Part shown: positions 4,724 to 32,897 of the stretch, in pieces | How the letters are laid out: the number at the start of each line of letters is the position of its first letter | Position numbering within the stretch: the first letter of the stretch is position 1 | Origin: Octopus sinensis | Lineage: Eukaryota | NCBI RefSeq assembly: GCF_006345805.1 | Contig: NW_021831898.1 | Location: 1-33,396 of the forward strand | DNA length: 33,396 nt | Direction of reading: 5' to 3' | The notes under the pieces: generated by a model | The model's input: the letters and a program-made list of their open reading frames with translations, nothing else | Told to the model about the DNA's origin: nothing | Databases searched by the model: none | Position numbers and translations under genes: made by a program

Positions 4724-4757
<34 letters not shown>

Positions 4758-4918: not shown

Positions 4919-4965
<47 letters not shown>

Positions 4966-5266: not shown

Positions 5267-5299
<33 letters not shown>

Positions 5300-5514
5300 T
5301 GTATGTATATATATATCTATATATAACTTATGTATATATATTTATATATATATATATATTATCATGTATGTATATATATTTATATATATATATATATATA
5401 TGTATGTATATATTTATATATATATATAATGTATGTATATATTTATATATATATATATATATATATAATGTATGTATATATTTTATATATATCTATGTAT
5501 GTATATATTTATAT
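3297..5514. repeat. AT-rich compound minisatellite block 1, unit approximately TAATGTATGTATATATATTTATATATATATA
   Basis: Tandem variable-length units. A sub-block at about 3760-4600 uses the variant TAATGTATATATGTATGT. Confidence 0.95.
4772..4801 (-). mobile_element. 30-bp fragment of the RTE 3' terminus embedded in the minisatellite
   Basis: TAACGTCCGTTCTCCATGCTAGCATGGGTT matches the RTE 3' end at about 18878-18907 with 2 mismatches. Confidence 0.8.
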
Positions 5515-8500
5515 AGAGGAAGAAAAGAGAAGTAGAGAGGAAGAAAAGAGAAGTCGAAAGGGCCTACACTCTCATTGCACCACACATGGCTTTGCTAAGC
5601 CAAGTCCTCAAGGTGGACAAAGACAAAGAGAGAGAGATGGAAACAGGAAACACCAACCACAGAGTGTCAAAAAATGACACGCCCACTGCCACAGTCGAAG
5701 AAGGCAAGCAGGGCAAACACAGACAGCGGCGATGGGGAACGAAAATAACCACCCGATGAAAAACCTATGCAGAAAGGAACCAGTGGACAACCATCCAACG
5801 GAGGAAGAAAAAACAGAGAGGAACTGGGGACAAGAAAACCCAGATAACATGCAAATTCTTCCGGAATGGAACCTGCTGGCATGGAGAAACAGAGGAAGGA
5901 TGCAGGTTCGCTCATCCCATCCCAGGCCCTATGGAAATTGCGTCAAACCCACTCGACCCAATGCCTTAACCAAAACCAAGACCGAAACCAAAACCAGAAC
6001 AAATACAAGCTGCCCCAGAAATATGCAGACATAGTGCGTAATGCCCCAACAAGGAGAAGGGCGCACATCTGCAGAGGAAATGCAGACGGCGGCAGCAGAA
6101 CAAAGAAATTTTGTGTGAAATAGCAGAGAAAATTGTGGGACAACTGGCCTGGATACATCGTCTTCAGAGCCAGGGGCACTCACAACAGCACTCAAGACCA
6201 CCACAATCAAGGGACCCAGGGTGGCCACCGCTGACACCAGCCCAGGTGCCACACCGTCAGCCTTTATTGACACCCCAAATATCTCACCAGTGCTTCTGCT
6301 GAATGTCAGAGGTCTGGTGAAACCCACTAATATGAGTAAAATTCCTTACCTTAGGGACTTAAGCACAAGCAACCATGCAATATGCATAGCACTGACTGAA
6401 ACGCACCTATCAAGCAGTATAGCAGATGCAGAAATACACATACCAAAGTATACTGTTTTTCGGTCAGACAGGAAGGAAAGAACTCATGGTGGGTTTGCCC
6501 TGTACGTCCGTGAAGATGTCACACCCATAGTACTGTTGACACACTCAAACTTAGTCTGTGACACACTGATAGTACACATGAAAACAACCGAAAATAGTAA
6601 TATGTGTCACATATCGGCCACCAGACACCCCTAGTCATGAAGGAGTGTTTGAAGATAGCCTCAGAAGAATAGAAGAAGTCCTGGACAACACTGGACCAGG
6701 TAACACCATTCTACTGCTGGGAGATTTTACCTTCCGAAAGTCAAATGGCCAGATGGCCATCTCCCTGGAATGACATCACTTGAACAGAGACAGACAGAGT
6801 CCTTGTTGGCTCTCACACGCAAGTTTTTCATGGAACACAGCAGTGCTTCGGCCAACAAGAAGTGAGAATGTCTTGGACCTCTGTTTCACAAGCAACCCGA
6901 TGCTCATCCACAACATAATGGTAACACCAACAATTCTCTCAGATCACAACTTAGTAGAGGTAATGATATATGGTATGAGAGAGTTAGTTGAGACGCAGCC
7001 ATTAGAAAATACCACAGGCCTATCCAGTCTAAACTTCCATAAGGCAAACTGGAAGAAGATCAACGAAGAGATCCGAAAACATGACTGGAGTGACGTCATC
7101 ACCACACAAGACACCACACACATTTCCAACATTTCATGACAACAATACAGAACATATGCCATAAGTTTGTCCCGGAGAAAAAAGCCAGCAGGCATAGGAA
7201 CGTTATTCCCAGAGACAGGAAAATACTTATGAGGCGAAGAGCTAAGCTCTCGAAGCAACTGAATGCACGGCAGAGAAACAATGAGGGACTCCACCTGAAA
7301 CTTTTTGAAACGGAAACTGCACTCAAACTTTCCTATGAGGAGAGGGGCAGAGAGAGAAGCCAGGGCCATAGAGAATATTAAAACAAACCCTAAAGCCTTC
7401 TTTAAATTTGCGAAAGAAACCACCTCGGTACACCTGCAAGATGGCCCACTCTTTGATAAAAAGGGCTCTCTAACTGAGGACCCCCAGGGATAAGTGAAAT
7501 ACTAAAGGAACAGTATAAAAGTGTGTGTTCACATCCCCTCTGGGGCACATGCAAATCACAAACCCAGAAGTTTTCTTTGATGCCACAACACTCCAAAACC
7601 AACACAACCATCGACCACATAGAGATGACAGAGAGGGATGTAATATCTGCCATAGAAGAAATGAGAATAACTCAGCTGCTGGACCAGATGGATTCCCAGC
7701 AGTCCTCCTAAAAGCATGCAGGCATGCCCTAGCGGGACCACTGAAGAAGCTCTTCAGTGGTTCCTTGGCTAACGGTAAACTGCCCAGGGCGCTAAAAGAA
7801 GGCACCCTATGCCCTATCCACAAAGGAGGGAGTAGAGCAGAGGCCAAAAACTACAGGCCAGTCTCCTGACGTCACACATAAGTAAGGTCATGGAACGAAT
7901 CATCAGAAAAAAACTGATCACGTTCCTCGAAGAAACTAACCGTCTCACTGACACACAGCATGGCTTTCGCCCAGGAAGAAGCTGCCTTACGCAGCTGTTA
8001 CAACACTACGACCTGGTACTGAACAACTACTGGATCGCTCACAGGTGGATGTGGTATATCTCGACTTGCGAAGGCCTTGACAAAGTCGACCACGGAGTGA
8101 TATGTCACAAATTACTCAGACTCGGCATAACAGGAAAAGTAGGTGAGTGGATACATGACTTCCTGAAGGACAGAAGCCAGATGGTTGCAGCCAATGGAGC
8201 CCTCTCGGGAAAGACACCATAGCAAGCGGGGTGCCACAGGGCACAGTCTTGGGACCCTTGCTGTTTTGGTGGCGCTCTCTGACATGCCCTTGGTAGCACA
8301 AACAACATCCCTCACTAGCTATGCTGATGACACAAAGGTAGCACAGGCAATCAAAAACCCAGTTGATGCTGACCTTTTACAACAAGATCTGGATGCCATA
8401 TACAAATGGGCTGAAGACAACAACATGCAATTTAATGCTGGTAAATTTCAAGCCTTACAATATCAAGCTGTAAACACATATACATTACAACCAACTATAC

Positions 8501-9305
8501 TGGTCCAGGAGGGATCGAAATCCCAGTATCGAAATCAATACGGGACCTGGGCATAGACATGAGTGACGATGCATCTTTTATCTTTTCTTCACACATCGCG
8601 AAGGTGGCGACAATGTGCAGACGACTCACTGGCTGGATCCTGAGGACATTCCGGAAGAGACTGCGAGACCATGTTGACACTATGGAGGACATTTGTCCTA
8701 AGCCGCCTGGACTACTGCTCCCAACTGTGGTCACCGGCATAGTGTCAACTAACCACAGAGCTTGAGACAATCCAAAGACATTTCACCAAGAGGATTTCCA
8801 CCATGAAAAAAAGAACTATTGGGAGAGGCTTAGGGAACTCAATTTGTACTCCTTGGAACGAAGACGAGAGAGATATGCAGTGATATACATATGGAAAATC
8901 CTGGAGGGACTAGCACCAAATTTTGGAATTGAGAGCTGTTCCAATCCCATCCCCGTACAGGACGTCACTGTGTGGTGCCAAAGGTCCCGTCTTCCACATC
9001 CAGGGTAAGGAGCAGATACTGTAATAGCCTGGGGTTCAGGGGCCCTCAGCTGTTCAACAAACTGCCAAGAAAACTAAGAGATCTACATGATGCGGATGTG
9101 GACATTTTCAAAAAAACATCTAGACAAGCTGCTTTCCGGGATCCCAGATGAACCCACTGCAAGGTACGAAGGTAACCTAAGGGCAGCAGCTACAAACTCT
9201 CTCTTAGCTCAGTGGCCAGCCATGGCAAACTGGACTTAGAGAGGGTAGCAACAAGGGCGGTGCCCCAGCATGGCCTCAGCCGGATGGCTGAAACAAGTAA
9301 AAGAG

Positions 9306-9307: not shown

Positions 9308-9340
<33 letters not shown>

Positions 9341-9433
9341 GTATGTATATATATTTATATATATATATATAATGTATGTATTATATATATATATAATGTA
9401 TGTATATATATTTATATATATATATATAATGTA

Positions 9434-9467
<34 letters not shown>

Positions 9468-9977
9468 ATGTATGTATTTATATATTTATATATATTATAA
9501 TGTATGTATATATATTTATATATATATATATAATGTATGTATATATTATTTATATATTATATATATGTATGTATTATCTATATATATATATATATATAAT
9601 GTATGTATATATTTATATATATATATAATTTATGTATATATATTTATATATATATATAGTATGTATATATTTAATATATATATATATATATAATTTATGT
9701 ATATATATTTATATATATATAATGTATGTATATATTTTATATATATATATATATATAATTTATGTATATATATTTTATATATATATATAATGTATGTATA
9801 TATTTTATATATAATAATATATATAATGTATGTATATATTTATATATATATATATATAATAATATATATAATGTATGTATAATTTATATATATATATGTA
9901 TAATGTATGTATATATTTATATATATATATGTATAATGTATGTATATATATTTATATATATATATATATAATGTATG

Positions 9978-10008
<31 letters not shown>

Positions 10009-10051
10009 AATAATGTATGTATAATATATATATATATATATATAATATAAA
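9308..10051. repeat. AT-rich compound minisatellite block 2
   Basis: Same TAATGTATGTATATAT(TT)ATA unit and same orientation as block 1. Confidence 0.95.
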
Positions 10052-10396
10052 CGTTCGCCAGCCTCGTCTGGCACCTGTGTCGGTGGCACATAAAAAAAAA
10101 AACACCATCCGAGCGTGGCCGTCTGCCAGCCCCGTCTGGCACCTGTGTCGGTGGCACATAAAAAACACCATCCGAGCGTGGCCGTCTGCCAGCCTCGTCT
10201 GGTACCTGTGTCGGTGGCACATAAAATCACCCACTACACTCTCGGAGTGGTTGGCGTTAGGAAGGGCATCCAGCTGTAGAAACACTGCCAGATCTGACTG
10301 GCCTGGTGCAGCCTTCGGGCTACCCAGACCCCAGTTGAACCGTCCAACCCATGCTAGCATGGAAAGCGGACGTTAAAAAATGATGATGATGATGAT
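10052..10396 (+). mobile_element. RTE LINE 3' UTR only, with internal ~60-bp repeats and (GAT)n tail
   Basis: Near-identical to the reverse complement of about 18864-19140, which is contiguous with an RTE ORF. It contains CCATGCTAGCATGG and ends in (TGA)5. Confidence 0.88.
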
Positions 10397-10555: not shown

Positions 10556-10562
10556 ATATATA
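10397..10562. repeat. AT-rich minisatellite block 3
   Basis: TAATGTATGT/TCATGTATGT + (TA)n units, same orientation as the other blocks. Confidence 0.85.
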
Positions 10563-10654
10563 TACTTTGATACTTTGATACTTTGATAGGTTTCGGCCAT
10601 TATTGGCCCAGGCCATGTCTAACTTAATAGCACCACCTGGTGAAGTCTTTCAAG

Positions 10655-13600
10655 TCAGAATTTGGGCACTATGGCCCACTCAAGTAGAGAGTTATTGTTT
10701 ACAGAGAAATATCCGGGTGTAGGGGGTTATCCGGGATTTCTTGAAGGAATCTGTCCAAAGACTTCTTGAACCCTATAGGGTCAGTTCTGTTTTAATGTGT
10801 TTTGGTGTATGTTAAAGAGAGCGGGGGCCAATTGAGGTGAAATAATTGTGCCGTATTGTTGTTATGAGATGAAGTGCGATTTTTGTTTTGGGCGGATGGC
10901 ACGGGGCCCAAGCCTTGGATGTACCTTAAAGGTGATGCCAACATCATTTGGGCAATGCTGATGGAATATTTTCCACATCATGCAGATGATGTAGCGCTCA
11001 CGACGACGTTGGAGAGAATAGAGTTTTAGCTTTTCTAGTCGACCCCAATAGTCGAGGCCTGTCATGCCATCTATCTTTTTTGTGATTGCCCTTTGTGGTG
11101 CTTCAACTTTTATGATACCTTGTATTGTGTGGGGAGACCACAGTGGACAACAGTATTCAAGGTGGGGTCGGGCAAAAGTGGAGAAGAGAAGGATAATGGT
11201 GTGGATATCTCTCGACTGAAAAGTTCTGAGAATCCAGGAACACATTCTGCGGGCCATGTCAACTTTGGTGTTTATATGAGTGGCCCAGCTTACGTTGTTG
11301 TCCACAATTACTCCCAAGTCTCTGATGTTGTTGGACGCCGCGAGAGTTTCACCTGAAGGAAGGGAGTATGGGAGTTTCAGGGCATCCTCTTTTCCAAAGT
11401 GGATTAGCTCAAATTTATCCTCGTTCAGCAGCATATTGTTTTTTCTGCCCATTGGATAACAGCCAGTAGATCTGACTGAAGGCATGTCCGGTCACTCGCC
11501 TCATTTATGACCTTCTGTAGCTTGGAGTCATCTGCAAAGATTTTTATGTTGCTGTGCTTGATGATGTCATTAATGTCATTAATGTAAATGATGAAAAGAA
11601 GTGGGCCCAGCACAGTGCCTTGCGGAACGCCACTACTGACTTTGGCTGGGCTTGATTTTACCCCTTCAACTACAACATGTTGAGATCTGTCTGTCAGGAA
11701 ACACTTAATCCATTTCAGTAACTTTCCAGAGACACCAATGTTGGATAGTTTTTTCAATAGGATCTTGTGATCGACCCTGTCGAAGGCCTTACTGAAATCA
11801 AGGTAGATGACATCGGTGTTGGAGCCCTCTCCAAAGCTCTCAAAATGTCCTCAAAGTGATGCAGGAGCTGCGTTAGGCAGTCCCTTCATTACGGAACCCA
11901 TGTTGGTTGGAGATCAGCCGTCTGTTGCTTTCCAGAAATTGGGTTATTCGAGATCTCACCACCCTCTCAAATACCTTGATGATATGAGAGGTGAGTGAAA
12001 TCGGACGGTAATTCACTGCAAGGGACTTGTTTCCCTTTTTGAAAACTGGGAAACAGACTGGGACAGGAGATTTTTTGGAATATAGCCAGCATCCAGTGAG
12101 TTTCTCCACAGATTAGCAAGGGAGATGCAAGTTGGTGTCGACACACTTTCAGGACACAAGCAGGGAACCTATCGGGGCCTACTGCTGATTGTGTTTTATT
12201 TCGTTTATCGCCGCTAAGACCTCAGGGGCACTAAACGTTTGTCCGATAGTGTGTTTGGGGGGGGTTGACATCACTGATACAGCCCAGATCGGCCATATCA
12301 GATTGCTGAAAACAGAGCAGTATTGTTTCTTGCAGTATCTCGGCCATGGATTTGGCATTATCTTGGAGATGCCAGTTTCGTCAATTAGAGGGCCTACAGT
12401 GAGACAGGACCCTGCGTTTCCTCGCAAATGAAAAGAACACTTTGGGGTTGAGTTTGATTTTTTCAATGGCCCACTTCTCCTCAGCTGATCTTTGGTTATT
12501 GATGAGGGTCTTCATGCATTGTTGGAGGTTATATTTTTTGGATTCAAGCAGTGCGATAGCCGTCGAATGTGTGTGTTGCTGTTGGCAGTACTTTAGTTTT
12601 GTTAATTTTTTTGTTTGTTCTTTTTATTTTTCTGATAATGGTTTTTCTGTTTTGGGGGATTCTGCACTTTTTGTTCACAGGTCTTGGTGGGGAGTGTTTT
12701 GCACATATGTCTGTGACGGTGTCTACAAAGATCTGCCAAGATGTTTTTATGGTTGGTGGAGATGTGTGTATGTGTAAAGGACCAGTCAACATTTGATAGC
12801 TCGTTCCTGATTGCATCCCAGTTGGCTTTATGGAGATCCATGTTGTCAAATGGTGGGCTGGAGGAAGGTCACTAGGATTAGCTTTCGGCTGTGGAATTTC
12901 ATGTTACAGAGAACCATGTCATGGTCTGAAAGAAGGGTTTTTTCCACTGTAACGTTATGTATAGTTGTTGTGTGTTACTAAACCTAGGTCCAAAATGTTC
13001 TGATGTCTTGTTGGTGCAAGGACAAGTTGGGACAAGAAAAACTCATTCGTAAAGTCGAAAAGTGACTCTGCTGCTTCTTTGTCAGCGGTTGAGGCGGGAG
13101 TGCTTGGTTTCAAACAGTTTGTAGTCCAGTCAACACAGGGTAGATTGAAGTCTCCCATCATGAGTATGTTGCTAGAATGGCACTGTTGAATAAAGCACTT
13201 AATGCTGTTGAGGCATTCTTTAAAGCACAGTATGGGTGTTTGGGGCGGCCTATAGAGCCCAATTACTGTCAGGTCATTGGCTTTGTTTTGCACGGGGACT
13301 GATTCACAGTAGCCGTTGGAGAATATACTATTTCCATCTGCCGTAAATGAATCATGCAGGAAAATGGCAGTTCCACCCTTCCTCCTGCCGATACGATCCG
13401 CGCGGATGGTTGTGAAATTCTTCACTCTCACTTCGGCTTCCAAGTGGGAGTTGTCAAGGTGGGTCTCAGTGAGAATGAAGAAAGGGATGTGGTGTGAATG
13501 GTTACCAACCCAGTCTTCAATGAATTGGACCTTCCATTTTTGTGCATTGATGGAAGGGCTGACACCTTGTGCATTGAGTAGGAATGTGGAGGTTAGTGTA

Positions 13601-15189: not shown

Positions 15190-15234
15190 TATAATATATA
15201 ATGTATGTATGTAATATATATATATAATATAATG

Positions 15235-15276
<42 letters not shown>

Positions 15277-15472
15277 GTATAATATATATTATATATTAAT
15301 GTATGTATATATATTTATATATATATATATATATATATAATGTATGTATATATATTTTATATATATATATAATGTATGTATTTATATTTATATATATATA
15401 TATATTATGTATGTATATATATTTATATATTATATATAATGTATGTATATATATATATATATAATGTATATG

Positions 15473-15515
<43 letters not shown>

Positions 15516-15529
15516 ATGTATATATATTT

Positions 15530-15560
<31 letters not shown>

Positions 15561-15941
15561 ATTATATTTATATATATATATATATGTATGTATATATTTT
15601 TATATATATATATAATGTATGTATATATATTTTATATATATATATATAAATATATTAATGTATGTATATATTTTTATATATTATATAATGTATGTATATA
15701 TTATTTATATATATATATAAATATATATAATGTATGTATATATATTTATATATATATAAAAATATATATAATGTATTATATATTATATGTTATATAATAT
15801 AATATATTATATATAGAATTATGTATATATTTATATATATATATATAATGTATGTATATATATTTATATATATATATATATAATGTATGTATATATATTT
15901 ATATATAATGTATGTATATATATTTATATATATATATAATA
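15190..15941. repeat. AT-rich compound minisatellite block 4
   Basis: Same unit and orientation as blocks 1-2. Confidence 0.95.
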
Positions 15942-16350: not shown

Positions 16351-17367
16351 TTTATATTATATATATATATATATATACATTATATATATATAATGTATGT
16401 ATGTATATATATATAATGTATGTATGTATATATATATATGTATTATGTATGTATATATATATAATGTATGTATGTATATATATATATATATAATGTATGT
16501 ATGTAATATAATGTATGTATGATGTATATATATAATGTATGTATGTATAATTATATGTATGTATGTATATATATATAATGTATGTATGTATAATAATATA
16601 TATAATGTATGTATGTATATATAATATTATAATGTATGTATGTATATATATATACTGTATTAGTATATATATATATTGTATGTATGTATATATATATATA
16701 ATGTATGTATGTATATATATATATAATGTATGTGATGTATGTATATATAATAATGTATGTATATATATATATACTGTATTTATGTATATATATATAATGT
16801 ATGTATGTATATATATATAATGTATGTATGTATATATATATAATGTATGTATGTATATATATATAATGTATGTATGTATATATATATAATGTATGTATGT
16901 ATATATATATATATAATGTATGTATGTATATATATATACTGTATGTATGTATGTATATATATATATATAATGTATGTATGTATATATATATACTGTATGT
17001 ATGTATATATATATACTGTATGTATGTATATATATATATAATGTATGTATGTATATATATATAATGTATGTATGTATATATATATAATGTATGTATGTAT
17101 GTATATATATATAATGTATGTATGTATATATATATAATGTATGTATGTATATATATATATATAATGTATGTATGTATATATATATATATAATGTATGTAT
17201 GTATATATATATAATGTATGTATGTATATATATATATATAATGTATGTATGTAATATATATATATGTAGTATGTATATATATATTATATTATGTATGTAT
17301 ATATATAATGTATGTATGTATATATATATAATGTATGTATGTGTATATATATATATATAATGTATGT
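16351..17367. repeat. AT-rich compound minisatellite block 5, variant unit TAATGTATGTATGTATATATATA
   Basis: Tandem units with an extra GTAT and an occasional TACTGTA variant. Confidence 0.95.
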
Positions 17368-18751: not shown

Positions 18752-18863
18752 TGTGTATGTATGTGTGTGTGTGTGTGTGTGTATATATATGTGTGTGTGT
18801 ATGTATATATATATGTGTGTGTGTATATATGTATGTGTGTGTAAATATATATGTATGTGTGTG
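18752..18863. repeat. (TG)n/(TA)n compound microsatellite
   Basis: Visible directly in the sequence. Confidence 0.9.
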
Positions 18864-20754
18864 TCATCATCATCGTTTAACGTCCGCTTTCCATGCTAGC
18901 ATGGGTTGGACGGTTCAACTAGGGTCTGGGAAGCCCGAAGGCTGCACCAGGCCAGTCAGATCTGGCAGTGTTTCTACAGCTGGATGCCCTTCCTAATGCC
19001 AACCACTCCGTGAGTGTAGTGGGTGCTTTTTATGTGCCACCGACACAGGTGCCAGACGAGGCTGGCGAACGGCCACGCTCGGATGGTGTTTTTTTTTGTG
19101 TCACCGACACAGGTGCCAGATGAGGCTGGCGAACGGCCACGCTCGGATGGTGTTTTTTACGTGCCACCAGCATGGAGGCCAGTCGAGGCTGGCACGGCCA
19201 CGATCGGATGGTGTTTGTTATGTGCCCACAGCACGGAGGCCAGTCGATGCGGTACTGGCTACGGCCACTTTCAGATGGTTTTCTTATGTGCCACTGGCAC
19301 TGGTACCACAAAAATACAAATTCCATTGATGTTCATCGATTTTGATTTGATTTGATTTTCACTTGCCTCAACAGGTCTTCACAAGTAGAGTTATGTGTCC
19401 CAAGAAGGTATGCACAGGTGGACTGACTACGTCCCAGGTAGGGCCTCACGTGTCCTGCCGGGTCTTCTCACGCACAGCATACTTCCAAAGGTCTCGGTCT
19501 CTGGTCATTTCCTCGGTGAGACCTAAAGCGCAAAGGTCGTTCTTCACCACCTCGTCCCAGGTTTTCCTGGGTCTACCTCTTCCACAGGTTCCCTCAACCG
19601 CTAGGGTGTGGCACTTTTTCACACAACTATCTTCATCCATTCTTACTACGTGTCCATACCAGCGTAGACGCCTCTCTTGCACACCACATCTGATGCTTCT
19701 TAGGTCCAACTTTTCTCTCAAGGCACTTACACTCTGTCGGGTATGAACACTGACATTACACATCCAACGGAGCATACTGGCTTCATTTCTTGCAAGCTTA
19801 CGCATATCCTCAGCAGTCACGGCCCATGTTTCACTGCCATGTAGCATGGCTGTTTGCACACATGCGTCATACAGTCTGCCTTTTATTCTGAGCGAGAGGC
19901 CTTTTGTCACCAGTAGAGGTAAGAGCTCTCTGAACTTTGCCCAGGCTATTCTTACTCTAGCAGTTACACTTTCGGCACACCCACCCCCGCTACTGACTTG
20001 GTCACCTAGGTAACGGAAACTATCAACTATTTCAAGTTTTTCTCCCTGGAATGTGGCGGAAGATGGTCTCTGCACATTTTCAGTCTTTATTGAACCAGAA
20101 CATCTGCCACATACAAAAACTATCTTCCTAGTTAGCCTTCCTTTGACATTGCTGCACCTCTTATGTGTCCATAGCTTACACTTGGTGCATCTTATAGAGT
20201 TTCTACAGATTGAGCAGGGCCATCTACCTGAAGGCGTTTGAGATTTGTCTACCTTCCTACTTATTAGGACTTTGGTTTTAGCTAGATTGACTCTAAAGCC
20301 CTTCGATTCTAATCCTTGCTTCCACGCCTGAAACTTCACCTCGAGTTCTGATAGTGATTCAGCTATTAGAGCAAGGTCGTCAGCATAGAGGAGCTCCCAG
20401 GGGCATCCTGTCTTGAATTCCTCTGTTATTGCCTGGAGGACTATGATAAATAGGATGAGGCTGAGGACTGAGCCTTGGTAGACCCCAACCTCCACCCGGA
20501 ATTCTTCACTGTACTCGTTGCCAACCCTCACCTTACTAACAGCGTCCCTGTACATGGCACGCACAGCTCTCACTAACCATTTATCTATCCCTAGTTTCCT
20601 CATTGACCACCAGATAAGGGATCGGGGGACTCTGTCAAAGGCTTTCTCCAAGTCAACGAAAGCCAGGTACAGAGTTTTATCTTTGGCTAGGTATTTCTCC
20701 TGCAGCTGTCTCACCAGAAATATGGCATCAGTGGTGCTTTTCCCTGGCACGAAA
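18864..20754 (-). mobile_element. RTE-clade LINE, 5'-truncated, with ~580-bp 3' UTR and (GAT)n tail
   Basis: Contains an uninterrupted RT ORF at 19446-20750. The UTR has ~60-bp tandem units, the GGATGCCCTTCCT motif and a terminal (TCA)n on the + strand. Confidence 0.93.
19446..20750 (-). CDS. RTE ORF C-terminal 434 aa: RT domain with a PHD-like C4HC3 insertion; 5'-truncated, so not a complete protein
   Basis: PGKSTTDAIF, FVDLEKAFDRVPR, YQGSVLS, LLYADDL, VNLAKTK, CSIC..CTKCKLWTHKRC..CGRC, FRYLG, RRLRWYGHV, GRGRPRKTW. Confidence 0.85.
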   Translation of the reverse strand: MPGKSTTDAIFLVRQLQEKYLAKDKTLYLAFVDLEKAFDRVPRSLIWWSMRKLGIDKWLVRAVRAMYRDAVSKVRVGNEYSEEFRVEVGVYQGSVLSLILFIIVLQAITEEFKTGCPWELLYADDLALIAESLSELEVKFQAWKQGLESKGFRVNLAKTKVLISRKVDKSQTPSGRWPCSICRNSIRCTKCKLWTHKRCSNVKGRLTRKIVFVCGRCSGSIKTENVQRPSSATFQGEKLEIVDSFRYLGDQVSSGGGCAESVTARVRIAWAKFRELLPLLVTKGLSLRIKGRLYDACVQTAMLHGSETWAVTAEDMRKLARNEASMLRWMCNVSVHTRQSVSALREKLDLRSIRCGVQERRLRWYGHVVRMDEDSCVKKCHTLAVEGTCGRGRPRKTWDEVVKNDLCALGLTEEMTRDRDLWKYAVREKTRQDT

Positions 20755-23700
20755 GTTGTATTGGCTGATATTGTTCAGAAAATCCTTTGACTGGAAGGAA
20801 GCTTTCCAGAAGATCCATAAGAGGCCGAAGGAGGAGCTGGTAGTGCTGGCAGTCTTACCTTAATGCCTGAGCAGCACATGCTATTAGCTTCATTTGATAA
20901 TTTGAAAGCTTTGCAGAAATGAGAATTTGTACAGAATTATCATTTTTATAAGACTAGGATGGATCATATATGAAAGCAGCTCCTGGAGTTGTGAAGAACG
21001 AATTTGCATGTGGTCTATTTCTGAGAGCTATTGTATTGGACTTCTGTCTAATCTGGCATGCTAAACATTGTTCTAATGATTCAGCATTAAGTGTTGCAGT
21101 ATGCCTTAGATAATCTTGGGAAAGTCTCATCACCCTTCCCTCTTGAGACTCCATTTGACGTGCTGCAGCATGCCTCTGCTGATCTTGGGAAAGTCTCATC
21201 ACCCTTCCCTCTTGAGACTCCATTTGACGTGCTGCAGCATGCCTCTGCTGATCTTGAGAAAGTCTCATCACCCTTCCTCTTGAGACTCATTTGACGTGCT
21301 GCAGCATGCCTCTGCTGATCTTGGGAAAGTCTCTCACCCTCCCTCTTGAGACTCCATTTGACGTGCTGCAGCATGCCTCTGCTGATCTTGTGAAGTCTCA
21401 TCACCCTTCCCTCTTGAGAACTCCATTTGACGTGCTGCAGCATGCCTCTGCTGATCTTGAGGAAAGTCTCATCACCCTCCCTCTTGAGACTCCATTTGAC
21501 GTGCTGCAGCATGCCTCTGCTGATCTTGGGAAAGTCTCATCACCCTTCCCTCTTGAGACTCCATTTGATGTGCTGCAGCATGCCGCTGCTGATCTTGGAA
21601 AGTCTCATCACCCTTCCCTCTTGAGACTCCATTTGACGTGCTGCAGCATGCCTCTGCTGATCTTGGGAAAGTCTCATCACCCTTCCCTCTTGAGACTCCA
21701 TTGACGTGCTGCAGCATGCCTCTGCTGATCTTGAGTAAGTCTCATCACCTTCCCTCTTGAACTCCATTTGACGTGCTGCAGCATGCCTCTGCTGATCTTG
21801 GGAAAGTCTCATCACCCTTCCCTCTTGATGAGACTCCATTTGACGTGCTGCAGCATGCCTCTGCTGATCTTGGGAAAGTCTCATCACCCTTCCCTCTTGA
21901 GACTCCATTTGACGTGCTGCAGCATGCTCTGCTGATCTTGGGAAAGTCTCATCACCCTTCCCTCTTGAGACTCCATTTGACGTGCTGCAGCATGCCTCTG
22001 CTGATCTTGGGAAAGTCTCATCACCCTTCTCTCTTGAGACTCCATTTGACGTGCTGCAGCATGCCTCTGCTGATTTGGGAAAGTCTCATCACCCTTCCCT
22101 CTTGAGACTCCATTTGACGTGCTGCAGCATGCCTCTGCTGATCTTGGGAAAGTCTCTCATCACCCTTCCCTCTTGAGACTCCATTTACGTGCTGCAGCAT
22201 GCCTCTGCTGATCTTGGGAAAGTCTCATCACCCTTCCCTCTTGAGACTCCATTTGATGTGCTGCAGCATGCCTCTGCTGATCTTGAGTAAGTCTCATCAC
22301 CCTTCCCTCTTGAGACTCCATTTGACGTGCTGCAGCATGCCTCTGCTGATCTTGGGAAAGTCTCATCACCCTTCCCTCTTGAGACTCCATTTGATGTGCT
22401 GCAGCATGCCTTTGCTGATCTTGGGAAAGTCTCATCACCCTTCTCTCTTGAGACTCCATTTGACGTGCTGCAGCATGCCTCTGCTGATCTTGGGAAAGTC
22501 TCATCACCCTTCTCTCTTGAGACTCCATTTGATGTGCTGCAGCATGCCTCTGCTGATCTTGGGAAAGTCTCATCACCCTTCCCTCTTGAGACTCCATTTG
22601 TGCTGCAGCATGCCTCTGCTGATCTTGGGAAAGTCTCATCATCCTTCCCTCTTGAGACTCCTTGATGTGCTGCAGCATGCCTCTGCTGATCTTGGGAAAG
22701 TCTCATCATCCTTCCCTCTTGAGACTCCATTTGATATGCTGCAGCATGCCTCTGCTGATCTTGGGAAAGTCTCATCACCCTTCCCTCTGAGACTCCATTG
22801 ATGTGCTGCAGCATGCCTCTGCTGATCTTGGGAAAGTCTCATCACCCTTCCCTCTTGAGACTCCATTTGATGTGCTGCAGCATGCCTCTGCTGATCTTGG
22901 GAAAGTCTCATCACCCTTCCCTCTTGAGACTCCATTTGACGTGCTGCAGCATGCCTCTGCTGATCTTGGGAAAGTCTAACCCTTCCCTCTTGAGACTCCA
23001 TTTGACGTGCTGCAGCATGCCTCTGATGATCTTGAGAAAGTCTCATCACCCTTCCCTCTTGAGACTCCATTTGACGGTGCTGCAGCATGCCTCTGCTGAT
23101 CTTGGGAAAGTCTCATCACCCTTCCCTCTTGAGACTCCATTTGACGTGCTGCAGCATGCCTCTGCTGATCTTGGGAAAGTCTCATCACCCTTCCCTCTTG
23201 AGACTCCATTTGACGTGCTGCAGCATGCCTCTGCTGATCTTGGGAAAGTCTCATCACCCTTCCCTCTTGAGACTCCATTTGATGTGCTGCAGCATGCCTC
23301 TGCTGATCTTGGGAAAGTCTCATCACCTTCCTCTTGAGACTCCATTTGATGTGCTGCAGCATGCCTCTGCTGATCTTGGGAAAGTCTCATCACCCTTCCC
23401 TCTTGAGACTCCATTTGATGTGCTGCAGCATGCCTCTGCTGATCTTGGGAAAGTCTCATCACCCTTCTCTCTTGAGACTCCATTTGATGTGCTGCAGCAT
23501 GCCTCTGCTGATCTTGAGAAAGTCTCATCACCCTTCTCTCTTGAGACTCCATTTGATGTGCTGCAGCATGCCTCTGCTGATCTTGGGAAAGTCTCATCAC
23601 CCTTCCCTCTTGAGACTCCATTTGACGTGCTGCAGCATGCCTCTGCTGATCTTGGGAAAGTCTCATCACCCTTCCCTCTTGAGACTCCATTTGACGTGCT

Positions 23701-26700
23701 GCAGCATGCCTCTGCTGATCTTGAGAAAGTCTCATCACCCTTCCCTCTTGAGACTCCATTTGACGTGCTGCAGCATGCCTCTGCTGATCTTGAGAAAGTC
23801 TCATCACCCTTCCCTCTTGAGACTCCATTTGACGTGCTGCAGCATGCCTCTGCTGATCTTGGGAAAGTCTCATCACCCTTCCCTCTTGAGACTCTATTTG
23901 ACCTGCTGCAGCATGCCTCTGCTGATCTTGAGTAAGCCTCATCACCCTTCCCTCTTGAGACTCCATTTGACGTGCTGCAGCATGCCTCTGCTGATCTTGG
24001 GAAAGTCTCATCACCCTTCTCTCTTGAGACTCCATTTGACGTGCTGCAGCATGCCTCTGCTGATCTTGAGTAAGTCTCATCACCCTTCCCTCTTGAGACT
24101 CCATTTGATGTGCTGCAGCATGCCTCTGCTGATCTTGGGAAAGTCTCATCACCCTTCCCTCTTGAGACTCCATTTGACCTGCTGCAGCATGCCTCTGCTG
24201 ATCTTGGGAAGGTCTCATCACCCTTCTCTCTTGAGACTCCATTTGATGTGCTGCAGCATGCCTCTGCTGATCTTGGGAAAGTCTCATCACCCTTCCCTCT
24301 TGAGACTCTATTTGACCTGCTGCAGCATGCCTCTGCTGATCTTGAGTAAGTCTCATCACCCTTCCCTCTTGAGACTCCATTTGACGTGCTGCAGCATGCC
24401 TCTGCTGATCTTGGGAAAGTCTCATCACCCTTCCCTCTTGAGACTCCATTTGACGTGCTGCAGCATGCCTCTGCTGATCTTGGGAAAGTCTCATCACCCT
24501 TCTCTCTTGAGACTCCATTTGACGTGCTGCAGCATGCCTCTGCTGATCTTGAGTAAGCCTCATCACCCTTCCCTCTTGAGACTCCATTTGACGTGCTGCA
24601 GCATGCCTCTGCTGATCTTGGGAAAGTCTCATCACCCTTCTCTCTTGAGACTCCATTGACGTGCTGCAGCATGCCTCTGCTGATCTTGGGAAAGTCTCAT
24701 CACCTCCCTCTCTGAGACTCCATTTGATGCGTGCTGCAGCATGCCTCTGCTGATCTTGAGTAAGTCTCATCCACTTCCCTCTTGAGACTCCATTTGACGT
24801 GCTGCAGCATGCCTCTGCTGATCTTGGGAAAGTCTCATCACCCTTCCCTCTTGAGACTCCATTTGACGTGCTGCAGCATGCCTCTGCTGATCTTGGGAAA
24901 GTCTCATCACCCTTCCCTCTTGAGACTCCATTTGACGTGTGCTGCAGCATGCCTCTGCTGATCTTGAGAAAGTCTCATCACCCTTCCCTCTTGAGACTCC
25001 ATTTGACGTGCTGCACAGCATGCCTCTGCTGATCTTGGGAAAGTCTCATCACCCTTCCCTCTTGAGACTCCATTTGACGTGCCTGCAGCATGCCTCTGCT
25101 GATCTGAGAAAGTCTCATCACCCTTCCCTCTTGAGACTCCATTTGACGTGCTGCAGCATGCCTCTGCTGATCTTGGAAAGTCTCATCACCCTTCCCTCTT
25201 GAGACTCTATTTGACGTGCTGCAGCATGCTCTTGCTGATCTTGGGAAAGTCTCATCACCCTTCCCTCTTGAGACTCCATTTGACCTGCTGCAGCATGCCT
25301 CTGCTGATTGAGTAAGTCTCATCACCCTTCCCCTTGAGACTCCATTTGACGTGCTGCAGCATGCCTCTGCTGATCTTGGGAAAGTCTCATCACCCTTCCC
25401 TCTTGAGACTCCATTTGACGTGCTGCAGCATGCCTTCTGATCTTGGGAAAGTCTCATCACCCTTCCCTCTTGAGACTCCATTTGACCTGCTGCAGCATGC
25501 CTCTCTGATCTTGAGTAAGTCTCATCACCCTTCCCTCTTGAGACTCCATTTGACGTGCTGCAGCATGCCTCTGCTGATCTTGGGAAAGTCTCATCACCCT
25601 TCCCTCTTGAGACTCATTTGACCTGCTGCAGCATGCCTCTGCTGATCTTGAGTAAGTCTCATCACCCTTCCCTCTTGAGACTCCATTTGACGTGCTGCCA
25701 GCATGCCTCTGCTGATCTTGGGAAAGTCTCATCACCCTTCCCTCTTGAGACTCCATTTGACGTGCTGCAGCTGCCTCTGCTGATCTTGGAAAGTCTCATC
25801 ACCCTTCTCTCTTGAGACTCCATTGGACGTGCTGCAGCATGCCTCTGCTGATCTTGAGTAAGTCTCATCACCCTTCCCTCTTGAGACTCCATTTGATGTG
25901 CTGCAGCATGCCTCTGCTGATCTTGAGTAAGTCTCATCACCCTTCCCTCTTGAGACTCCATTTGACGTGCTGCAGCATGCCTCTGCTGATCTTGGGAAAG
26001 TCTCATCACCCTTCCCTCTTGAGACTCCATTTGACGTGCTGCAGCATGCCTCTGCTGATCTTGGGAAAGTCTCATCACCCTTCCCTCTTGAGACTCCATT
26101 TGACGTGCTGCAGCATGCCTCTGCTGATCTTGAGAAAGTCTCATCACCCTTCCCTCTTGAGACTCCATTTGACGTGCTGCAGCATGCCTCTGCTGATCTT
26201 GGGAAAGTCTCATCACCCTTCCCTCTTGAGACTCCATTTGACGTGCTGCAGCATGCCTCTGCTGATCTTGAGAAAGTCTCATCACCCTTCCCTCTTGAGA
26301 CTCCATTTGACGTGCTGCAGCATGCCTCTGCTGATCTTGAGAAAGTCTCATCACCCTTCCCTCTTGAGACTCTATTTGATGTGCTGCAGCATGCCTCTGC
26401 TGATCTTGGGAAAGTCTCATCACCCTTCTCTCTTGAGACTCCATTTGACGTGCTGCAGCATGCCTCTGCTGATCTTGGGAAAGTCTCATCACCCTTCTCT
26501 CTTGAGACTCCACTTGACGTGCTGCAGCATGCCTCTGCTGATCTTGGGAAAGTCTCATCACCCTTCCCTCTTGAGACTCTATTTGATGTGCTGCAGCATG
26601 CCTCTGCTAATCTTGGGAAAGTCTCATCACCCTTCCCTCTTGAGACTCCATTTGACGTGCTGCAGCATACCTCTGCTGATCTTGAGAAAGTCTCGTCTCC

Positions 26701-27362
26701 CTTTTCTGTTGAGTCTCTCACCTTTGGTTTTCTGCAATTGTCCTCGCTTTATATGTGTTTGAGAGATTACATCTTTTCTTTGGTGGCATATTTTTTGCAG
26801 TATTGTAAAACAAAAAATTATGAACATAGACAAAATTATACATTAATCAATATTTTTGTAAGCAGTTGTATGTATGCAGTATGTTTGTATTTTTGTATGC
26901 TGTGTAAATTAACGAAATATAAGCAAATGAACAAAATAGAAGCACATGTATGGAACTGCTAATTTAACAGGAAATGCAACAATAATTATTACAGAGAGAC
27001 GAGGAATTTTATATTTTACCTTCCAACCTTGCAACTGTTGCGATAATTATTAACTGGTAATGGAACAGTAAATGTGTATTGTTTTAATGGAAATGAAAAT
27101 AAAAATTCCTATTCACACTGGCTACTTCACGCATGTCAGTTGTCAGGTATGTATGTGTAGATGTGTGTGTGTTTATTAATGTACTGTGTATAGTATGCCT
27201 GTATTTTTGTATGTAGTGTAAATTAATCCCCGAAAAGTACATGTTGACACTCCTGGAGTCTCATAGTATTTACCATGTAAAATTTGATTTGATTTCGTTC
27301 AGCCATTTGAGAATGCTTTGGAAACAGACAGCGATGCAAAGGATTTTATATATATATATAGA
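20755..27362 (-). mobile_element. Helitron, 5' portion only: 5' terminus, N-terminal ORF with expanded repeat, zinc-ribbon region; Rep and helicase domains absent
   Basis: The 5' end is A|TCTATATATATATATAAAATCC..CTCAAATGGCTGAACGAAATCAAATCAAATTTT at 27362. The ORF starts MPPKKRCNLSNTYKART (ATG 26789). After the repeats come AAFIYDPS, FCKAFKLSNEANSMCCSGIKVRLPALPAPP, PLMDLL and SKDFLNNISQYN, the usual Helitron pre-Rep motifs. Confidence 0.82.
21113..26717 (-). repeat. ~80 tandem 69-bp units encoding ESQEGRVMRLSQDQQRHAAARQM (STPR-like 23-aa repeat)
   Basis: The + strand unit is TCTTGAGACTCCATTTGACGTGCTGCAGCATGCCTCTGCTGATCTTGGGAAAGTCTCATCACCCTTCCC. About 5.6 kb divided by 69 gives about 81 units. 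There are no spacers. Confidence 0.97.
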
Positions 27363-27466
27363 TAGATATGTGATATCATTGTATATGATGGGGGTGGGAT
27401 TAGTGGAAAAAAATCATAAATTTTCAAACATTTTCCACATAAAATGCTTACCCCATCGTTTGCAAG

Positions 27467-27790
27467 ATCATCATCATCGTTTCACTGCTGGCATGGTTGG
27501 AAGGTTCAACTGGGGTCTGGGAAATCTGGAGGCTGCACCAGGCTCCAGTCTAATCTGGCATTGTTTCTGCAGCTGGATGCCCTTCCTAACGCCAACCACT
27601 CCGAGAGTGTAGCGGGTGCTTTTTACATGGCACTGGCCAGAAGGAGCTGGCGTCGACCATAATCTGATGGTGCTTTTTATGTGCCACTTGCACAGGAACT
27701 AGTCAAAGCAGTGCTGGCATTGGCCATGTTCGGATGGTGCTTTTTTGTGTCACTGGCACAGGAGCTAATCAGGGTGAGGGGGCTGGTGAC
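27467..27790 (-). mobile_element. Older RTE 3' UTR copy with (GAT)n tail
   Basis: Diverged match to 18864-19200 (GCTGGATGCCCTTCCTAACGCCAACCACTCC, internal units). Confidence 0.82.
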
Positions 27791-29951: not shown

Positions 29952-30547
29952 CTGTAAGAGGCAGACCCTGGAAAACCTGGGACAAGGTGGTGAAGCACGA
30001 CCTTCGAACTTTAGGTCTCACCGAGGAAATGACTAGAGACCGAGACCTTTGGAAGTATGTTGTGCATGAGAAGACCCGGCAGGACAAGTGAGACCATAAC
30101 CTGTGGCCTCTACATGGGATGTAGCCAGTCCACTTATGCATACCTTTCCTTCTTGGGACACAAAACTCTACTTGTGAAGACCTGTTGAGGCAAGTGAAAA
30201 TCAAAATCAAAATCGATCAACATCAATGGAAATTGCAGCTGTGATACCAGTGCCGGTGGCATGTAAGAGAACCATCCGAACGTGGCTGTTGCCAGCACCG
30301 CCCCGACTGGCCTCGTGCCGGTGGCACGTAAAAAGCACCATCCGATCGTGGCCATTGCCAGCCTCGCCTGGCACGTAAAAAGCACCCACTACACTCATGG
30401 AGTGGTTGGCGTTAGGAAGGGCATCCAGCCAGCCGGAAAACATTGCCAGATCAGACTGGGCCTGGTGCAGCCTTCTGGCTTCCCAGACCCCAGTTGAACC
30501 GTCCAACCCATTCTAGCATGGAAAGCGGATGCTAAACGATGATGATG
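29952..30547 (+). mobile_element. RTE LINE 3' fragment: ORF end, 3' UTR and (GAT)n tail
   Basis: RGRPWKTWDKVVKHDLRTLGLTEEMTRDRDLWKYVVHEKTRQDK* parallels the end of the 19446-20750 ORF. The UTR is collinear with the reverse complement of 18864-19445. Confidence 0.88.
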
Positions 30548-32700: not shown

Positions 32701-32897
32701 CTTGCACTCTCTGTGAGGCTCCAATATCTGAAGATTATTTCTCACCATATTTTCTTGGGTCTACCCTTTCCACAGGCTCTCTCCACAATTAGAAATCAGC
32801 ACTTTTTTATGCAGCTGTCCTCATCTATATGCATCACATGACCACACCAGCACAATCTTCTCTCTTGCACACATCTAATGCCTCTTATACCCAATTA
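32701..32897 (-). mobile_element. Old RTE ORF C-terminal fragment
   Basis: Degenerate match to about 19540-19710 (TTTTCTTGGGTCTACCCTTTCCACAGG..CTCTCTTGCACAC). Confidence 0.65.

What the first reader, a model, noticed from the sequence alone, without database searches (positions are those of the whole stretch)
20755..27362. Helitron whose N-terminal STPR-like coding repeat has amplified to ~80 copies
Seen: a Helitron-type 5' end (A|TC, 27362) and ATG 26789 (MPPKKR..). A divergent first repeat (ETQQKRETRLSQDQQRYAAARQM) is followed by ~80 near-identical copies of ESQEGRVMRLSQDQQRHAAARQM and a divergent last repeat (ESLEQCLACQIRQKSNTIALRN). Then come AAFxYDP, C..CC..KV.LP and FLNNIxxYN. Known: 23-residue E[TS]xExRxxRL repeats define the STPR DNA-binding domain (four copies in silkworm FMBP-1), and similar short runs occur at Helitron RepHel N-termini. 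Inference: one central repeat expanded about 20-fold into a ~5.6-kb satellite inside the ORF. It is either a satellite being born from transposase coding sequence or a ~1,900-aa helical repeat protein. Against function: in-frame stops at 26718-26720 and 20954-20956, and no Rep/helicase.
Basis: partly seen in the sequence, partly recalled or inferred. Interest (0 to 1): 0.75.

Follow-up and report, generated by a model that had tools for sequence, protein, structure and literature searches.

The report
Dead Helitron fragment with amplified coding repeat
A broken front end of a Helitron transposase gene, probably in an octopus genome, has had one 69-base repeat from its DNA-binding domain copied about 82 times into a 5.6-kb array, which looks like a tandem repeat forming from dead transposon coding sequence rather than a working giant protein.

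Summary
The array is real: 81.9 head-to-tail copies of a 69-bp unit lie at 21091-26717. On the minus strand the unit reads ESQEGRVMRLSQDQQRHAAARQM. The unit belongs to the STPR repeat family. It sits where relatives carry 4-15 such repeats, between an MPPKK leader and the zinc-finger-like C..C/CC..GKV.LP/NIRxYN region of Helitron RepHel proteins, including the solved Helraiser protein.

It is not an open reading frame as assembled. There are 23 stops in the ATG frame, about 53 small indels and 22 phase changes. The post-array motifs need three different frames.

Helitron homology stops at 20755. A 5'-truncated LINE reverse transcriptase begins at 20753. No Rep or helicase domain is found anywhere in the 33-kb window.

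Unit substitutions look neutral (13 nonsynonymous, 5 synonymous, 1 stop). Private indels outnumber private substitutions 5:1. The same pattern appears in another duplicated stretch of the window. Much of the frame damage may therefore be long-read assembly noise.

Best reading: a recent local expansion, by unequal exchange or slippage, of near-identical internal STPR-coding units in a dead Helitron 5' fragment. The proposed 5' terminus at 27362 and the question of local event versus family trait could not be tested. Interest is modest.

The parts
26790..27362 (-). The boundary is unverified.
   Evidence: No other copy exists in the window. ATC occurs 12 times in the 691 bp upstream of the ATG. 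A different repeat, a LINE 3'-end module, ends at about 27466. The true 5' boundary therefore lies somewhere between 26790 and 27466.
26718..26789 (-). Start codon and basic leader MPPKKRCNLSNTYKARTIAENQR, followed by an in-frame TGA (26720-26718).
   Evidence: Relatives start with MPPKK, MPRRKR or MPSRKK in the alignment.
26649..26717 (-). Unit 1, the divergent first STPR-like repeat ETQQKRETRLSQDQQRYAAARQM. It has 8 mismatches to the consensus.
   Evidence: It aligns with the first repeat of relatives.
21152..26648 (-). Units 2-81, the amplified 69-bp unit (consensus ESQEGRVMRLSQDQQRHAAARQM). Units 2-13 and 31-49 are indel-free. Units 14-30, 50-60 and 66-80 carry many indels. Unit 2 holds a TAG at 26609-26607.
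   Evidence: Pfam STPRs scores above its threshold on in-frame blocks.
21017..21151 (-). Two divergent last repeats, ESQEGRVMRLSQDYLRHTATLNA and ESLEQCLACQIRQKSNTIALRN.
   Evidence: They align with the degenerate last repeats of P0004 and P0015.
20755..21016 (-). Decayed zinc-finger-like part of the RepHel N-terminus. It reads ..FFTTPGAAFIYDPS*(TAG 20956-20954) / HFCKAFKLSNEANSMCCSGIKVRLPALPAPP / LRPLMDLLES / SKDFLNNISQYN. Three frames are needed, and it is truncated before the SAFQMTSFGA motif.
   Evidence: tblastn of P0004 and P0015 reaches 20755. phmmer of the stitched tail against relatives gives 5.8e-22 for P0004, and 19 relatives match at E<1e-3, directly after the repeats where checked. 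The profile matches Helraiser residues 11-218.
18865..20753 (-). A 5'-truncated non-LTR retrotransposon (LINE) in the same orientation. It is not part of the Helitron but defines where the fragment ends. The RT ORF is 20750-19446 and the 3' UTR carries 64-bp tandem repeats at 19294-19022.
   Evidence: Pfam RVT_1 at 2.6e-22. tblastn of LINE proteins starts at 20753, at about residue 310 of proteins 740-760 aa long. The best named relatives are from Octopus vulgaris (86%) and O. bimaculoides (83%). The 3' end is defined by four copies.
18752..18864 (-). Microsatellite tail, (CA)n/(TACA)n on the minus strand, after the LINE 3' end.

Best explanation
The region is the dead 5' fragment of a Helitron RepHel (transposase) gene. 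The host is most likely an octopod cephalopod, inferred from the neighbouring LINE.

The ancestral gene probably had an MPPKK leader and about five 23-residue STPR DNA-binding repeats. The first and last repeats were divergent and the internal ones were nearly identical at the DNA level. After the repeats came the zinc-finger-like region, then Rep and helicase.

In this copy everything after 'NISQYN' is missing. A 5'-truncated LINE abuts the break at 20754.

The near-identical internal 69-bp units acted as a substrate for unequal sister-chromatid or homologue exchange, or for replication slippage. They expanded to about 80 copies (5.6 kb). Continued exchange or conversion produced a mosaic of unit variants.

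The expansion happened at the DNA level without protein-level constraint, so the array is a TE-derived minisatellite or nascent satellite, not a gene.

Shown: the array, the homology, the truncation, the absence of Rep/Hel, the broken frame as assembled and the neutral substitution pattern. Inferred: the mechanism of expansion, its recency and that it took place in this dead copy.
For: Array: 81.9 copies of 69 bp at 95% match. Chance expectation for the unit core is 0.

Identity of the unit and its context:
- Pfam STPRs scores 41.7 and 34.6 bits against a cut-off of 27 on in-frame blocks.
- An exhaustive HMMER search gave 124 hits. About 19 of them carry the same post-repeat region, directly after the repeats where checked.
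- The family profile hits Helraiser 7lcc at 9.8e-20 and FMBP-1 5d23 at 8.5e-8.
- HELIANO reports STPRs as a stable domain of HLE1 Helitrons.

Ancestral state:
- The closest relative, P0004, has 5 repeats. Its 3 internal ones are near-identical and its edge repeats are divergent, as in the window.
- True STPR relatives have at most about 13-15 units, for example P0088 and P0031.

The copy is dead:
- TGA lies before unit 1, TAG in unit 2 and TAG at 20954. The tail needs three frames.
- The LINE junction is at 20753-20755.
- No Rep/Hel similarity exists anywhere in the window.

No protein-level constraint and recent expansion:
- The 19 distinct substitutions split 13 nonsynonymous, 5 synonymous and 1 stop. 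All possible single changes split 156:42:9.
- Only 11 private substitutions occur in about 5.5 kb.

Exchange or conversion: 22 unit haplotypes from 6 shared variant sites occur in mosaic order with no higher-order period.

Precedent: expansion of internal Helitron or Helentron arrays into satellite DNA is established.
Against: - Frame status is uncertain. There are 53 private indel events against 11 private substitutions, clustered in blocks.
- An unrelated duplicated stretch, 1-1345 versus 10556-11891, differs by 29 gap events against 10 mismatches, mostly in homopolymer runs. Many frameshifts may therefore be assembly errors, which weakens 'broken ORF' as evidence of death.
- Array length is not verified by reads.
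- No sibling copies or orthologous loci were available. 'Local expansion in a dead copy' versus 'expansion inherited from an active master or a dispersed satellite family' is undecided.
- The Helitron 5' terminus is unverified, and there is no 3' terminus.
- The substitution test has low power, with only 19 variants.
Confidence: 0.72

Rival explanations
1. The expansion is not local. It arose in a transposing Helitron lineage, or the unit is already a dispersed satellite family. Sibling copies or free arrays elsewhere in the genome would then carry comparably long arrays.
For: Copy number of near-identical internal STPR units varies widely among Helitron N-termini in other genomes: about 11 in P0002, about 14 in P0088 and about 13 in P0031. 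Repeat-number instability is therefore a family property. Helitron-borne arrays are known to spread as satellite DNA.
Against: No predicted protein among the 1.84 billion cluster representatives searched (clustered from about 15 billion proteins) has more than about 15 true STPR units. No protein in the 5.8-billion word-indexed set shares this unit. The unit is absent from the metagenome contigs and from the rest of the window. None of these collections demonstrably contains the source genome, so the test is weak.
Confidence: 0.2
2. The array length or its fine structure is an assembly artefact, from over-expansion or mis-joining of long noisy reads in a tandem repeat.
For: Indel-dominated differences in the array and between two near-identical LINE fragments indicate a noisy long-read consensus in repeats. 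Clean and noisy blocks alternate abruptly.
Against: The array has unique, homologous flanks on both sides in the correct gene order: leader and unit 1 on one side, last units and zinc-finger-like region on the other. The units form 22 haplotypes in a non-periodic mosaic rather than a stutter of identical copies. Long-read assemblers more often collapse tandem arrays than expand them (general knowledge).
Confidence: 0.1
3. The array is translated. If the indels are assembly errors, an ORF of about 1,880 aa runs from a Met at a unit boundary after the TAG in unit 2 to the TAG at 20954. It would encode a giant all-helical STPR protein, a domesticated or neo-functional DNA binder.
For: Pfam STPRs scores above its threshold. 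AlphaFold2 predicts six units as one continuous helix with pLDDT 93.9. BmSTPR helices track the major groove of AT-rich or (ATAC)n DNA at 4 bp per helix, and the window is rich in (TA)n and (ATAC)-like tracts. Most frame damage is of the kind expected from assembly noise.
Against: Substitution-type stops lie before unit 1 and in unit 2, separating the leader and any NLS from the array. The substitution spectrum is indistinguishable from neutral and includes proline and stop changes. The downstream part of the gene is decayed and truncated by a LINE. No homologous long-array protein was found. Four of the six frames of the unit are open, so long ORFs here carry no weight.
Confidence: 0.04
4. 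The Helitron fragment and the LINE form one chimeric retrocopy. The LINE reverse transcriptase switched template from its own RNA to a Helitron transposase mRNA, so this locus was never a DNA-transposed Helitron. The array expanded before or after that event.
For: The Helitron sense strand and the 5'-truncated LINE are joined head-to-tail in the same orientation, with the junction within 3 bp (20755/20753). No Helitron sequence follows the LINE 3' end.
Against: No target-site duplication was found flanking the composite. The same orientation is expected half the time by chance. A LINE insertion with an associated deletion explains the data equally well. An upstream non-coding stretch of 570 bp or more, with no recognisable retrocopy boundary, is present.
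Confidence: 0.1

Closest known systems
Helitron (HLE1) RepHel transposases with N-terminal STPR-like repeats, e.g. bat Helraiser (PDB 7lcc) and arthropod copies such as XP_043468040.1 of Leptopilina heterotoma
   Same: The order is the same: basic leader, 23-residue E[ST]xExRxxRL repeats, then AAFxYxP ... C.FC.A.K ... CCSGGKV.LP ... FLxNIRxYN. The profile hits Helraiser at E 9.8e-20. [quoted passage not shown]
   Different: The window has about 82 repeats against 4-15 in relatives. It has no Rep or helicase and is truncated at NISQYN by a LINE. It carries stops and frameshifts, and its termini are not demonstrable.
STPR DNA-binding domain of silkworm FMBP-1 (Pfam PF21107; PDB 5d23/5d2q/5d2s)
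   Same: The period is 23 residues and the fold is all-helical. Pfam scores above the gathering threshold on in-frame blocks. The family profile gives E 8.5e-8 to 5d23. AlphaFold2 predicts a helix.
   Different: FMBP-1 has four repeats in a host transcription factor. Here there are about 82 repeats in a dead transposon fragment. A single-sequence search against PDB found nothing. DNA binding is untested.
Satellite DNAs derived from internal tandem repeats of Helitron/Helentron elements (e.g. Cg170/HindIII in Crassostrea gigas, DINE-TR1 central tandem repeats in Drosophila)
   Same: A short internal tandem array of a rolling-circle transposon expanded into a long array. One described 'intermediate form' also has an element component on only one side.
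   Different: The known cases involve non-coding central repeats of non-autonomous elements and are multi-locus. Here the seed is the coding repeat of the transposase's own DNA-binding domain, and only one locus is known.
Coding minisatellite expansions (VNTRs inside repeat-domain genes)
   Same: A repeat unit whose length is a multiple of three, concerted evolution of internal units and divergent edge units.
   Different: There is no evidence that this array is still expressed or under selection. The host gene is a decayed transposase.

Membership tests
Helitron (HLE1) transposon | Rep (HUH endonuclease, Pfam Helitron_like_N) domain | tested here: not met
   tblastn of full-length RepHel relatives (P0002, P0031, P0024, P0060, P0247) finds nothing outside 20755-26897. 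The fragment ends before this domain.
Helitron (HLE1) transposon | PIF1-type helicase domain | tested here: not met
   Same searches. No helicase similarity exists in the 33-kb window.
Helitron (HLE1) transposon | Homology to the RepHel N-terminal region (STPR-like repeats plus zinc-finger-like C..C/CC..GKV motif) | tested here: met
   phmmer of the tail against relatives reaches 5.8e-22. tblastn of P0004 gives 2.9e-26. The alignment is A1. The profile hits Helraiser 7lcc_A residues 11-218 at E 9.8e-20.
Helitron (HLE1) transposon | 5'-TC terminus inserted after a host A | tested here: inconclusive
   A|TC exists at 27363|27362, but ATC occurs 12 times in the 691 bp upstream of the ATG. No second copy was available to define the boundary.
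Helitron (HLE1) transposon | 3' subterminal hairpin and CTRR terminus | tested here: not met
   Helitron homology ends at 20755, where a LINE begins. No Helitron sequence follows the LINE.
STPR domain (PF21107) | Tandem 23-residue repeats scoring above the Pfam gathering threshold | tested here: met
   41.7 bits (E 1.6e-10) for units 31-49 and 34.6 bits (E 2.6e-8) for units 3-13, against a cut-off of 27. The leader plus 7 units alone scored only 20.5 bits, so the pass depends on summing many identical units.
STPR domain (PF21107) | Sequence relationship to the solved FMBP-1 STPR domain | tested here: met
   The profile of the window plus 7 relatives hits 5d23_A at E 8.5e-8. The window repeats alone gave no hit at E<=1.
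STPR domain (PF21107) | All-alpha structure | tested here: met
   The AlphaFold2 single-sequence model of six units is helical over residues 3-137 with mean pLDDT 93.9. This is a prediction only.
STPR domain (PF21107) | Binding to AT-rich DNA along the major groove | not testable with these tools
   Known for BmSTPR. It needs a binding assay.
Satellite DNA / minisatellite | Long head-to-tail array of a homogeneous monomer | tested here: met
   81.9 copies of 69 bp at 95% match. The units form a mosaic of 22 haplotypes.
Satellite DNA / minisatellite | Presence at multiple loci or high genomic abundance | not testable with these tools
   The source genome is not searchable here. The unit is absent from the rest of the window and from metagenome contigs.
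Satellite DNA / minisatellite | No protein-coding constraint | tested here: inconclusive
   Substitutions split 13 nonsynonymous, 5 synonymous and 1 stop, against a neutral 156:42:9. The ATG frame has 23 stops. Power is low, and the indels may be assembly errors.

The most novel reading that the evidence does not exclude
If the many 1-2 bp indels are long-read assembly errors, the locus could encode a roughly 1,880-residue protein made almost entirely of about 80 STPR helices. At 4 bp per helix, as in BmSTPR, it could coat about 320 bp of AT-rich or (ATAC)n DNA. It would be a transposase-derived binder of the very long (TA)n and ATAC-type microsatellites that fill this genome region.
Probability: 0.04. 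Interest if true: 0.8.

Novelty: new variant of a known kind. Interest (0 to 1): 0.35.

Why it matters
Tandem arrays growing out of Helitron or Helentron internal repeats are a recognised route to satellite DNA. The documented seeds are non-coding central repeats of non-autonomous elements. In this case the seed is the coding repeat of the transposase's own STPR DNA-binding domain, and both ancestral edge repeats are still attached. The origin and the direction of the expansion can therefore be read directly.

The case also illustrates that STPR repeat number is unstable in Helitron N-termini, ranging from 4 to 15 in relatives and reaching about 82 here.

If the 69-bp unit turns out to be a dispersed satellite in octopods, this locus would be its birthplace or an intermediate. 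If it is unique, it is a tidy but minor example. It is also a warning for annotation: four of the six frames of the unit are open, so ORF finders report many long spurious ORFs here.

Tried and rejected
- A word-indexed protein search with the stitched N-terminus found nothing. The same search with profile A1 found only arthropod relatives and no cephalopod siblings.
- An exact-product lookup of the LINE ORF, meant to identify the source contig, found nothing.
- A scan of metagenome contigs for the unit core found nothing.
- A target-site duplication around the Helitron-plus-LINE composite was sought. Only low-complexity matches turned up.
- Higher-order repeat structure was sought and not found.
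- tRNA and Rfam scans of the window, run to classify the short dispersed repeat, found nothing.
- A single-sequence PDB search with the repeats found nothing. The profile search did find hits.
- Several HMMER hits with long 23-residue periodic runs (P0003, P0016, P0050, and P0055, which is a leucine-rich repeat protein) were inspected and rejected as unrelated repeat proteins.
- A palindromic assembly artefact was considered for the inverted pair 1-1345 / 10556-11891 and rejected. The sequence between the two arms is not symmetric.
- Looking up the DNA encoding P0004 and P0015 was not attempted, because the tool restricts such look-ups to other protein sets.
Full report
**1. The observation**

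Tandem Repeats Finder reports a single dominant array at 21091-26717: period 69, 81.9 copies, 95% matches, 2% indels, score 10084. A 47-nt core of the unit matches 63 times with up to 3 mismatches. All matches lie on the minus strand between 21161 and 26635. Dinucleotide-preserving shuffles give none.

- ATG at 26789, encoding MPPKKRCNLSNTYKARTIAENQR.
- TGA at 26720-26718.
- A divergent first unit, ETQQKRETRLSQDQQRYAAARQM (26717-26649, 8 mismatches to the consensus).
- The consensus unit ESQEGRVMRLSQDQQRHAAARQM.
- Two divergent last units, ESQEGRVMRLSQDYLRHTATLNA and ESLEQCLACQIRQKSNTIALRN.
- ...GAAFIYDPS, followed by TAG at 20956-20954.

**2.

As assembled, the array is not a reading frame.
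- 27 of 81 unit-to-unit intervals differ from 69 bp.
- Alignment of every unit to the consensus shows about 53 small indel events in units 2-81.
- The unit phase changes 22 times. The ATG frame holds 23 stops between 26789 and 20954, including an extra TAG in unit 2 at 26609-26607.
- The indels are confined to units 14-30, 50-60 and 66-82. Units 1-13 and 31-49 have none.
- The three post-array motifs lie in three different frames: AAFIYDPS; HFCKAFKLSNEANSMCCSGIKVRLPALPAPP; and SKDFLNNISQYN.
- Four of the six frames of the consensus unit contain no stop. The many long ORFs that an ORF finder lists on both strands here are therefore meaningless.

**3. How far the frameshifts can be trusted**

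Among units 2-81 there are 53 indel events, almost all private. Only 11 substitutions are private, and the other substitutions are shared variants at six to eight sites. A 5:1 excess of private indels over private substitutions is the reverse of a normal mutation spectrum.

The same signature appears elsewhere in the window. The near-identical inverted pair 1-1345 / 10556-11891 differs by 10 mismatches and 29 gap events, and 18 of those gaps are single bases in homopolymer runs.

I infer that the assembly carries long-read consensus indel noise in repeated sequence. Part or most of the frame damage in the array may therefore be technical. The three stop codons created by substitutions are not of this kind: TGA 26720-26718, TAG 26609-26607 and TAG 20956-20954.

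**4. Identity of the unit and its context**

Pfam results:
- Pfam's STPRs model (PF21107) is the top hit.
- It scores 20.5 bits for the leader plus seven units, below the cut-off of 27.
- It scores 34.6 bits (E 2.6e-8) for the in-frame units 3-13 and 41.7 bits (E 1.6e-10) for units 31-49.

Relatives:
- An exhaustive HMMER search of 1.84 billion cluster representatives with units 3-13 gave 124 hits at E<=1e-3.
- The stitched post-array region matches 19 of these hits at E<1e-3. In those inspected the match lies directly after their own repeats (P0004 at 5.8e-22, P0015 at 1e-17).
- tblastn of these hits places their homology at 21277-20755.
- Longer relatives carry STPRs together with Helitron_like_N and PIF1. 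Some also carry DUF6570 or OTU (P0002, P0031, P0024, P0060).
- Named relatives come from arthropods: Leptopilina, Euphydryas, Parnassius, Eumeta and Cordylochernes.

Solved structures: a profile built from the window's stitched N-terminus and seven relatives (A1) hits two structures. One is the bat Helitron transposase Helraiser (7lcc_A, residues 11-218, E 9.8e-20). The other is the FMBP-1 STPR domain (5d23_A, E 8.5e-8).

Literature: the HELIANO survey lists STPRs among domains stably associated with HLE1 Helitrons (PMC11417382). FMBP-1 has four STPRs that form tandem helices running along the major groove of AT-rich DNA (PMC4856987).

Structure prediction: AlphaFold2 predicts six window units as one continuous helix with pLDDT 93.9, from a single sequence.

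**5. It is a fragment, not a Helitron**

- Helitron homology stops at 20755, at '...NISQYN'. Relatives continue there with SAFQMTSFGA.
- From 20753 the same strand encodes the middle and C-terminal part of a non-LTR reverse transcriptase. The ORF is 20750-19446, and Pfam RVT_1 gives 2.6e-22. The similarity begins at about residue 310 of proteins 740-760 aa long.
- The LINE's 3' end is at 18865. It is defined by four copies of the same 3' module, which carries 64-bp internal repeats and ends ...AAACGATGATGATGA. A (CA/TACA)n tract follows to 18752.
- Nothing Helitron-like follows. Full-length RepHel queries find no Rep or helicase anywhere in the 33 kb.
- No target-site duplication could be found.

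I cannot say whether the LINE inserted into the Helitron with loss of the rest, or whether the composite is a template-switch retrocopy.

The LINE's best named relatives are from Octopus vulgaris (86% identity) and O. bimaculoides (83%). The window is therefore probably from an octopod genome. O. vulgaris is reported to contain Helitron families (PMC13282606).

**6. The 5' terminus**

The proposed A|TC at 27363|27362 exists. However, ATC occurs 12 times in the 691 bp upstream of the ATG. The region has no second copy in the window. A different repeat ends at about 27466. The boundary lies somewhere in 26790-27466 and is otherwise untested.

**7. How the array arose (inference)**

- The closest relative, P0004, has five repeats: a divergent first, three nearly identical internal ones and a degenerate last. 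The window has the same layout with about 80 internal units.
- Other Helitron N-termini carry about 11 units (P0002), about 13 (P0031) and about 14 (P0088). These often fall into blocks of near-identical copies.
- Repeat number is thus unstable in this domain generally. Even so, 82 is five- to six-fold beyond anything found.
- Near-identical 69-bp direct repeats are a classic substrate for unequal exchange and slippage.
- Six shared variant sites combine into 22 unit haplotypes, arranged as a non-periodic mosaic. This fits ongoing exchange or conversion. It argues against a simple assembly stutter.
- Only 11 private substitutions occur in about 5.5 kb (0.2%), which points to a recent expansion or recent homogenisation.
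- The 19 distinct substitutions split 13 nonsynonymous, 5 synonymous and 1 stop. All possible single changes split 156:42:9, so there is no sign of purifying selection, though power is low.

**8. Comparison with what is known, and verdict**

Expansion of internal tandem repeats of Helitrons or Helentrons into satellite DNA is well documented, including 'intermediate' forms with element sequence on one side only (PMC12628747). The difference here is the seed. It is the coding repeat of the transposase's own DNA-binding domain, and both ancestral edge repeats are still attached. I rate this a new variant of a known kind, of modest interest.

The locus fails membership as a Helitron element: it has no Rep, no helicase and no demonstrable termini. 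It is securely homologous to the N-terminus of Helitron RepHel proteins, and the unit is an STPR-type repeat.

It survives only if nearly all indels are artefacts, and even then the leader is cut off by stops. I give it about 4%.

Three questions remain open: the true array length and frame (needs reads), whether sibling copies or free arrays exist (needs the genome), and the 5' terminus.

Noticed in passing
1-1345 (+) and 10556-11891 (-): This inverted pair of near-identical LINE-derived segments (96.4% identity) differs by 10 mismatches but 29 gap events, 18 of them single bases in homopolymer runs. This looks like long-read consensus indel noise and affects how far any frameshift in this window can be trusted.
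   Followed up: yes
10097-10389 (+), 18864-19584 (-), 27466-27762 (-), 29953-30547 (+): There are four copies of a LINE 3'-end module. It holds the ORF C-terminus and a 3' UTR with 63/64-bp internal tandem repeats, and ends ...AAACGATGATGATGA. These are either 5'-truncated LINE copies or a SINE-like derivative. No tRNA or Rfam match was found.
   Followed up: partly
3297-5515, 9308-10049, 15190-15938, 16353-17367: Very long (TA)n microsatellites, up to 2.2 kb. ATAC/TGTA-type tracts occur at 2686-2963 and 18752-18864. BmSTPR is reported to prefer AT-rich and (ATAC)n DNA. The co-occurrence with an STPR-coding array may be a coincidence.
   Followed up: no
1900-2750: A strongly C/T-rich low-complexity block on the plus strand (GC skew about -0.7), with degenerate TCCC/TCTC repeats.
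   Followed up: no
6780-8553 (+), 11428-12037 (-), 12958-13443 (-), 32733-32894 (-): Further decayed LINE pieces with endonuclease and reverse-transcriptase similarity. The whole window is dominated by decayed transposon fragments and holds no recognisable host gene.
   Followed up: partly
27226-27195 and 26912-26881 (minus strand): A 32-bp imperfect direct repeat (TTAATTTACAC..CATACAAAAATACA..CAT, 4 mismatches) lies 314 bp apart inside the putative Helitron 5' non-coding region. Its origin is unknown.
   Followed up: no
19446-20750 (-): The LINE ORF carries a PHD-finger-like segment C-terminal to the RT. The Pfam PHD hit is weak here (E 0.028), but PF00628 is precomputed for most homologues. 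Homologues are widespread in marine invertebrates, including Hydractinia, Mercenaria and Branchiostoma.
   Followed up: partly
P0088 (protein from the representative library, not in the window): This predicted protein fuses a LINE C-terminal fragment to about 14 near-identical STPR units and a Helitron zinc-finger-like region. It is an intermediate-size STPR expansion beside LINE sequence in another genome, similar in arrangement to this locus.
   Followed up: partly
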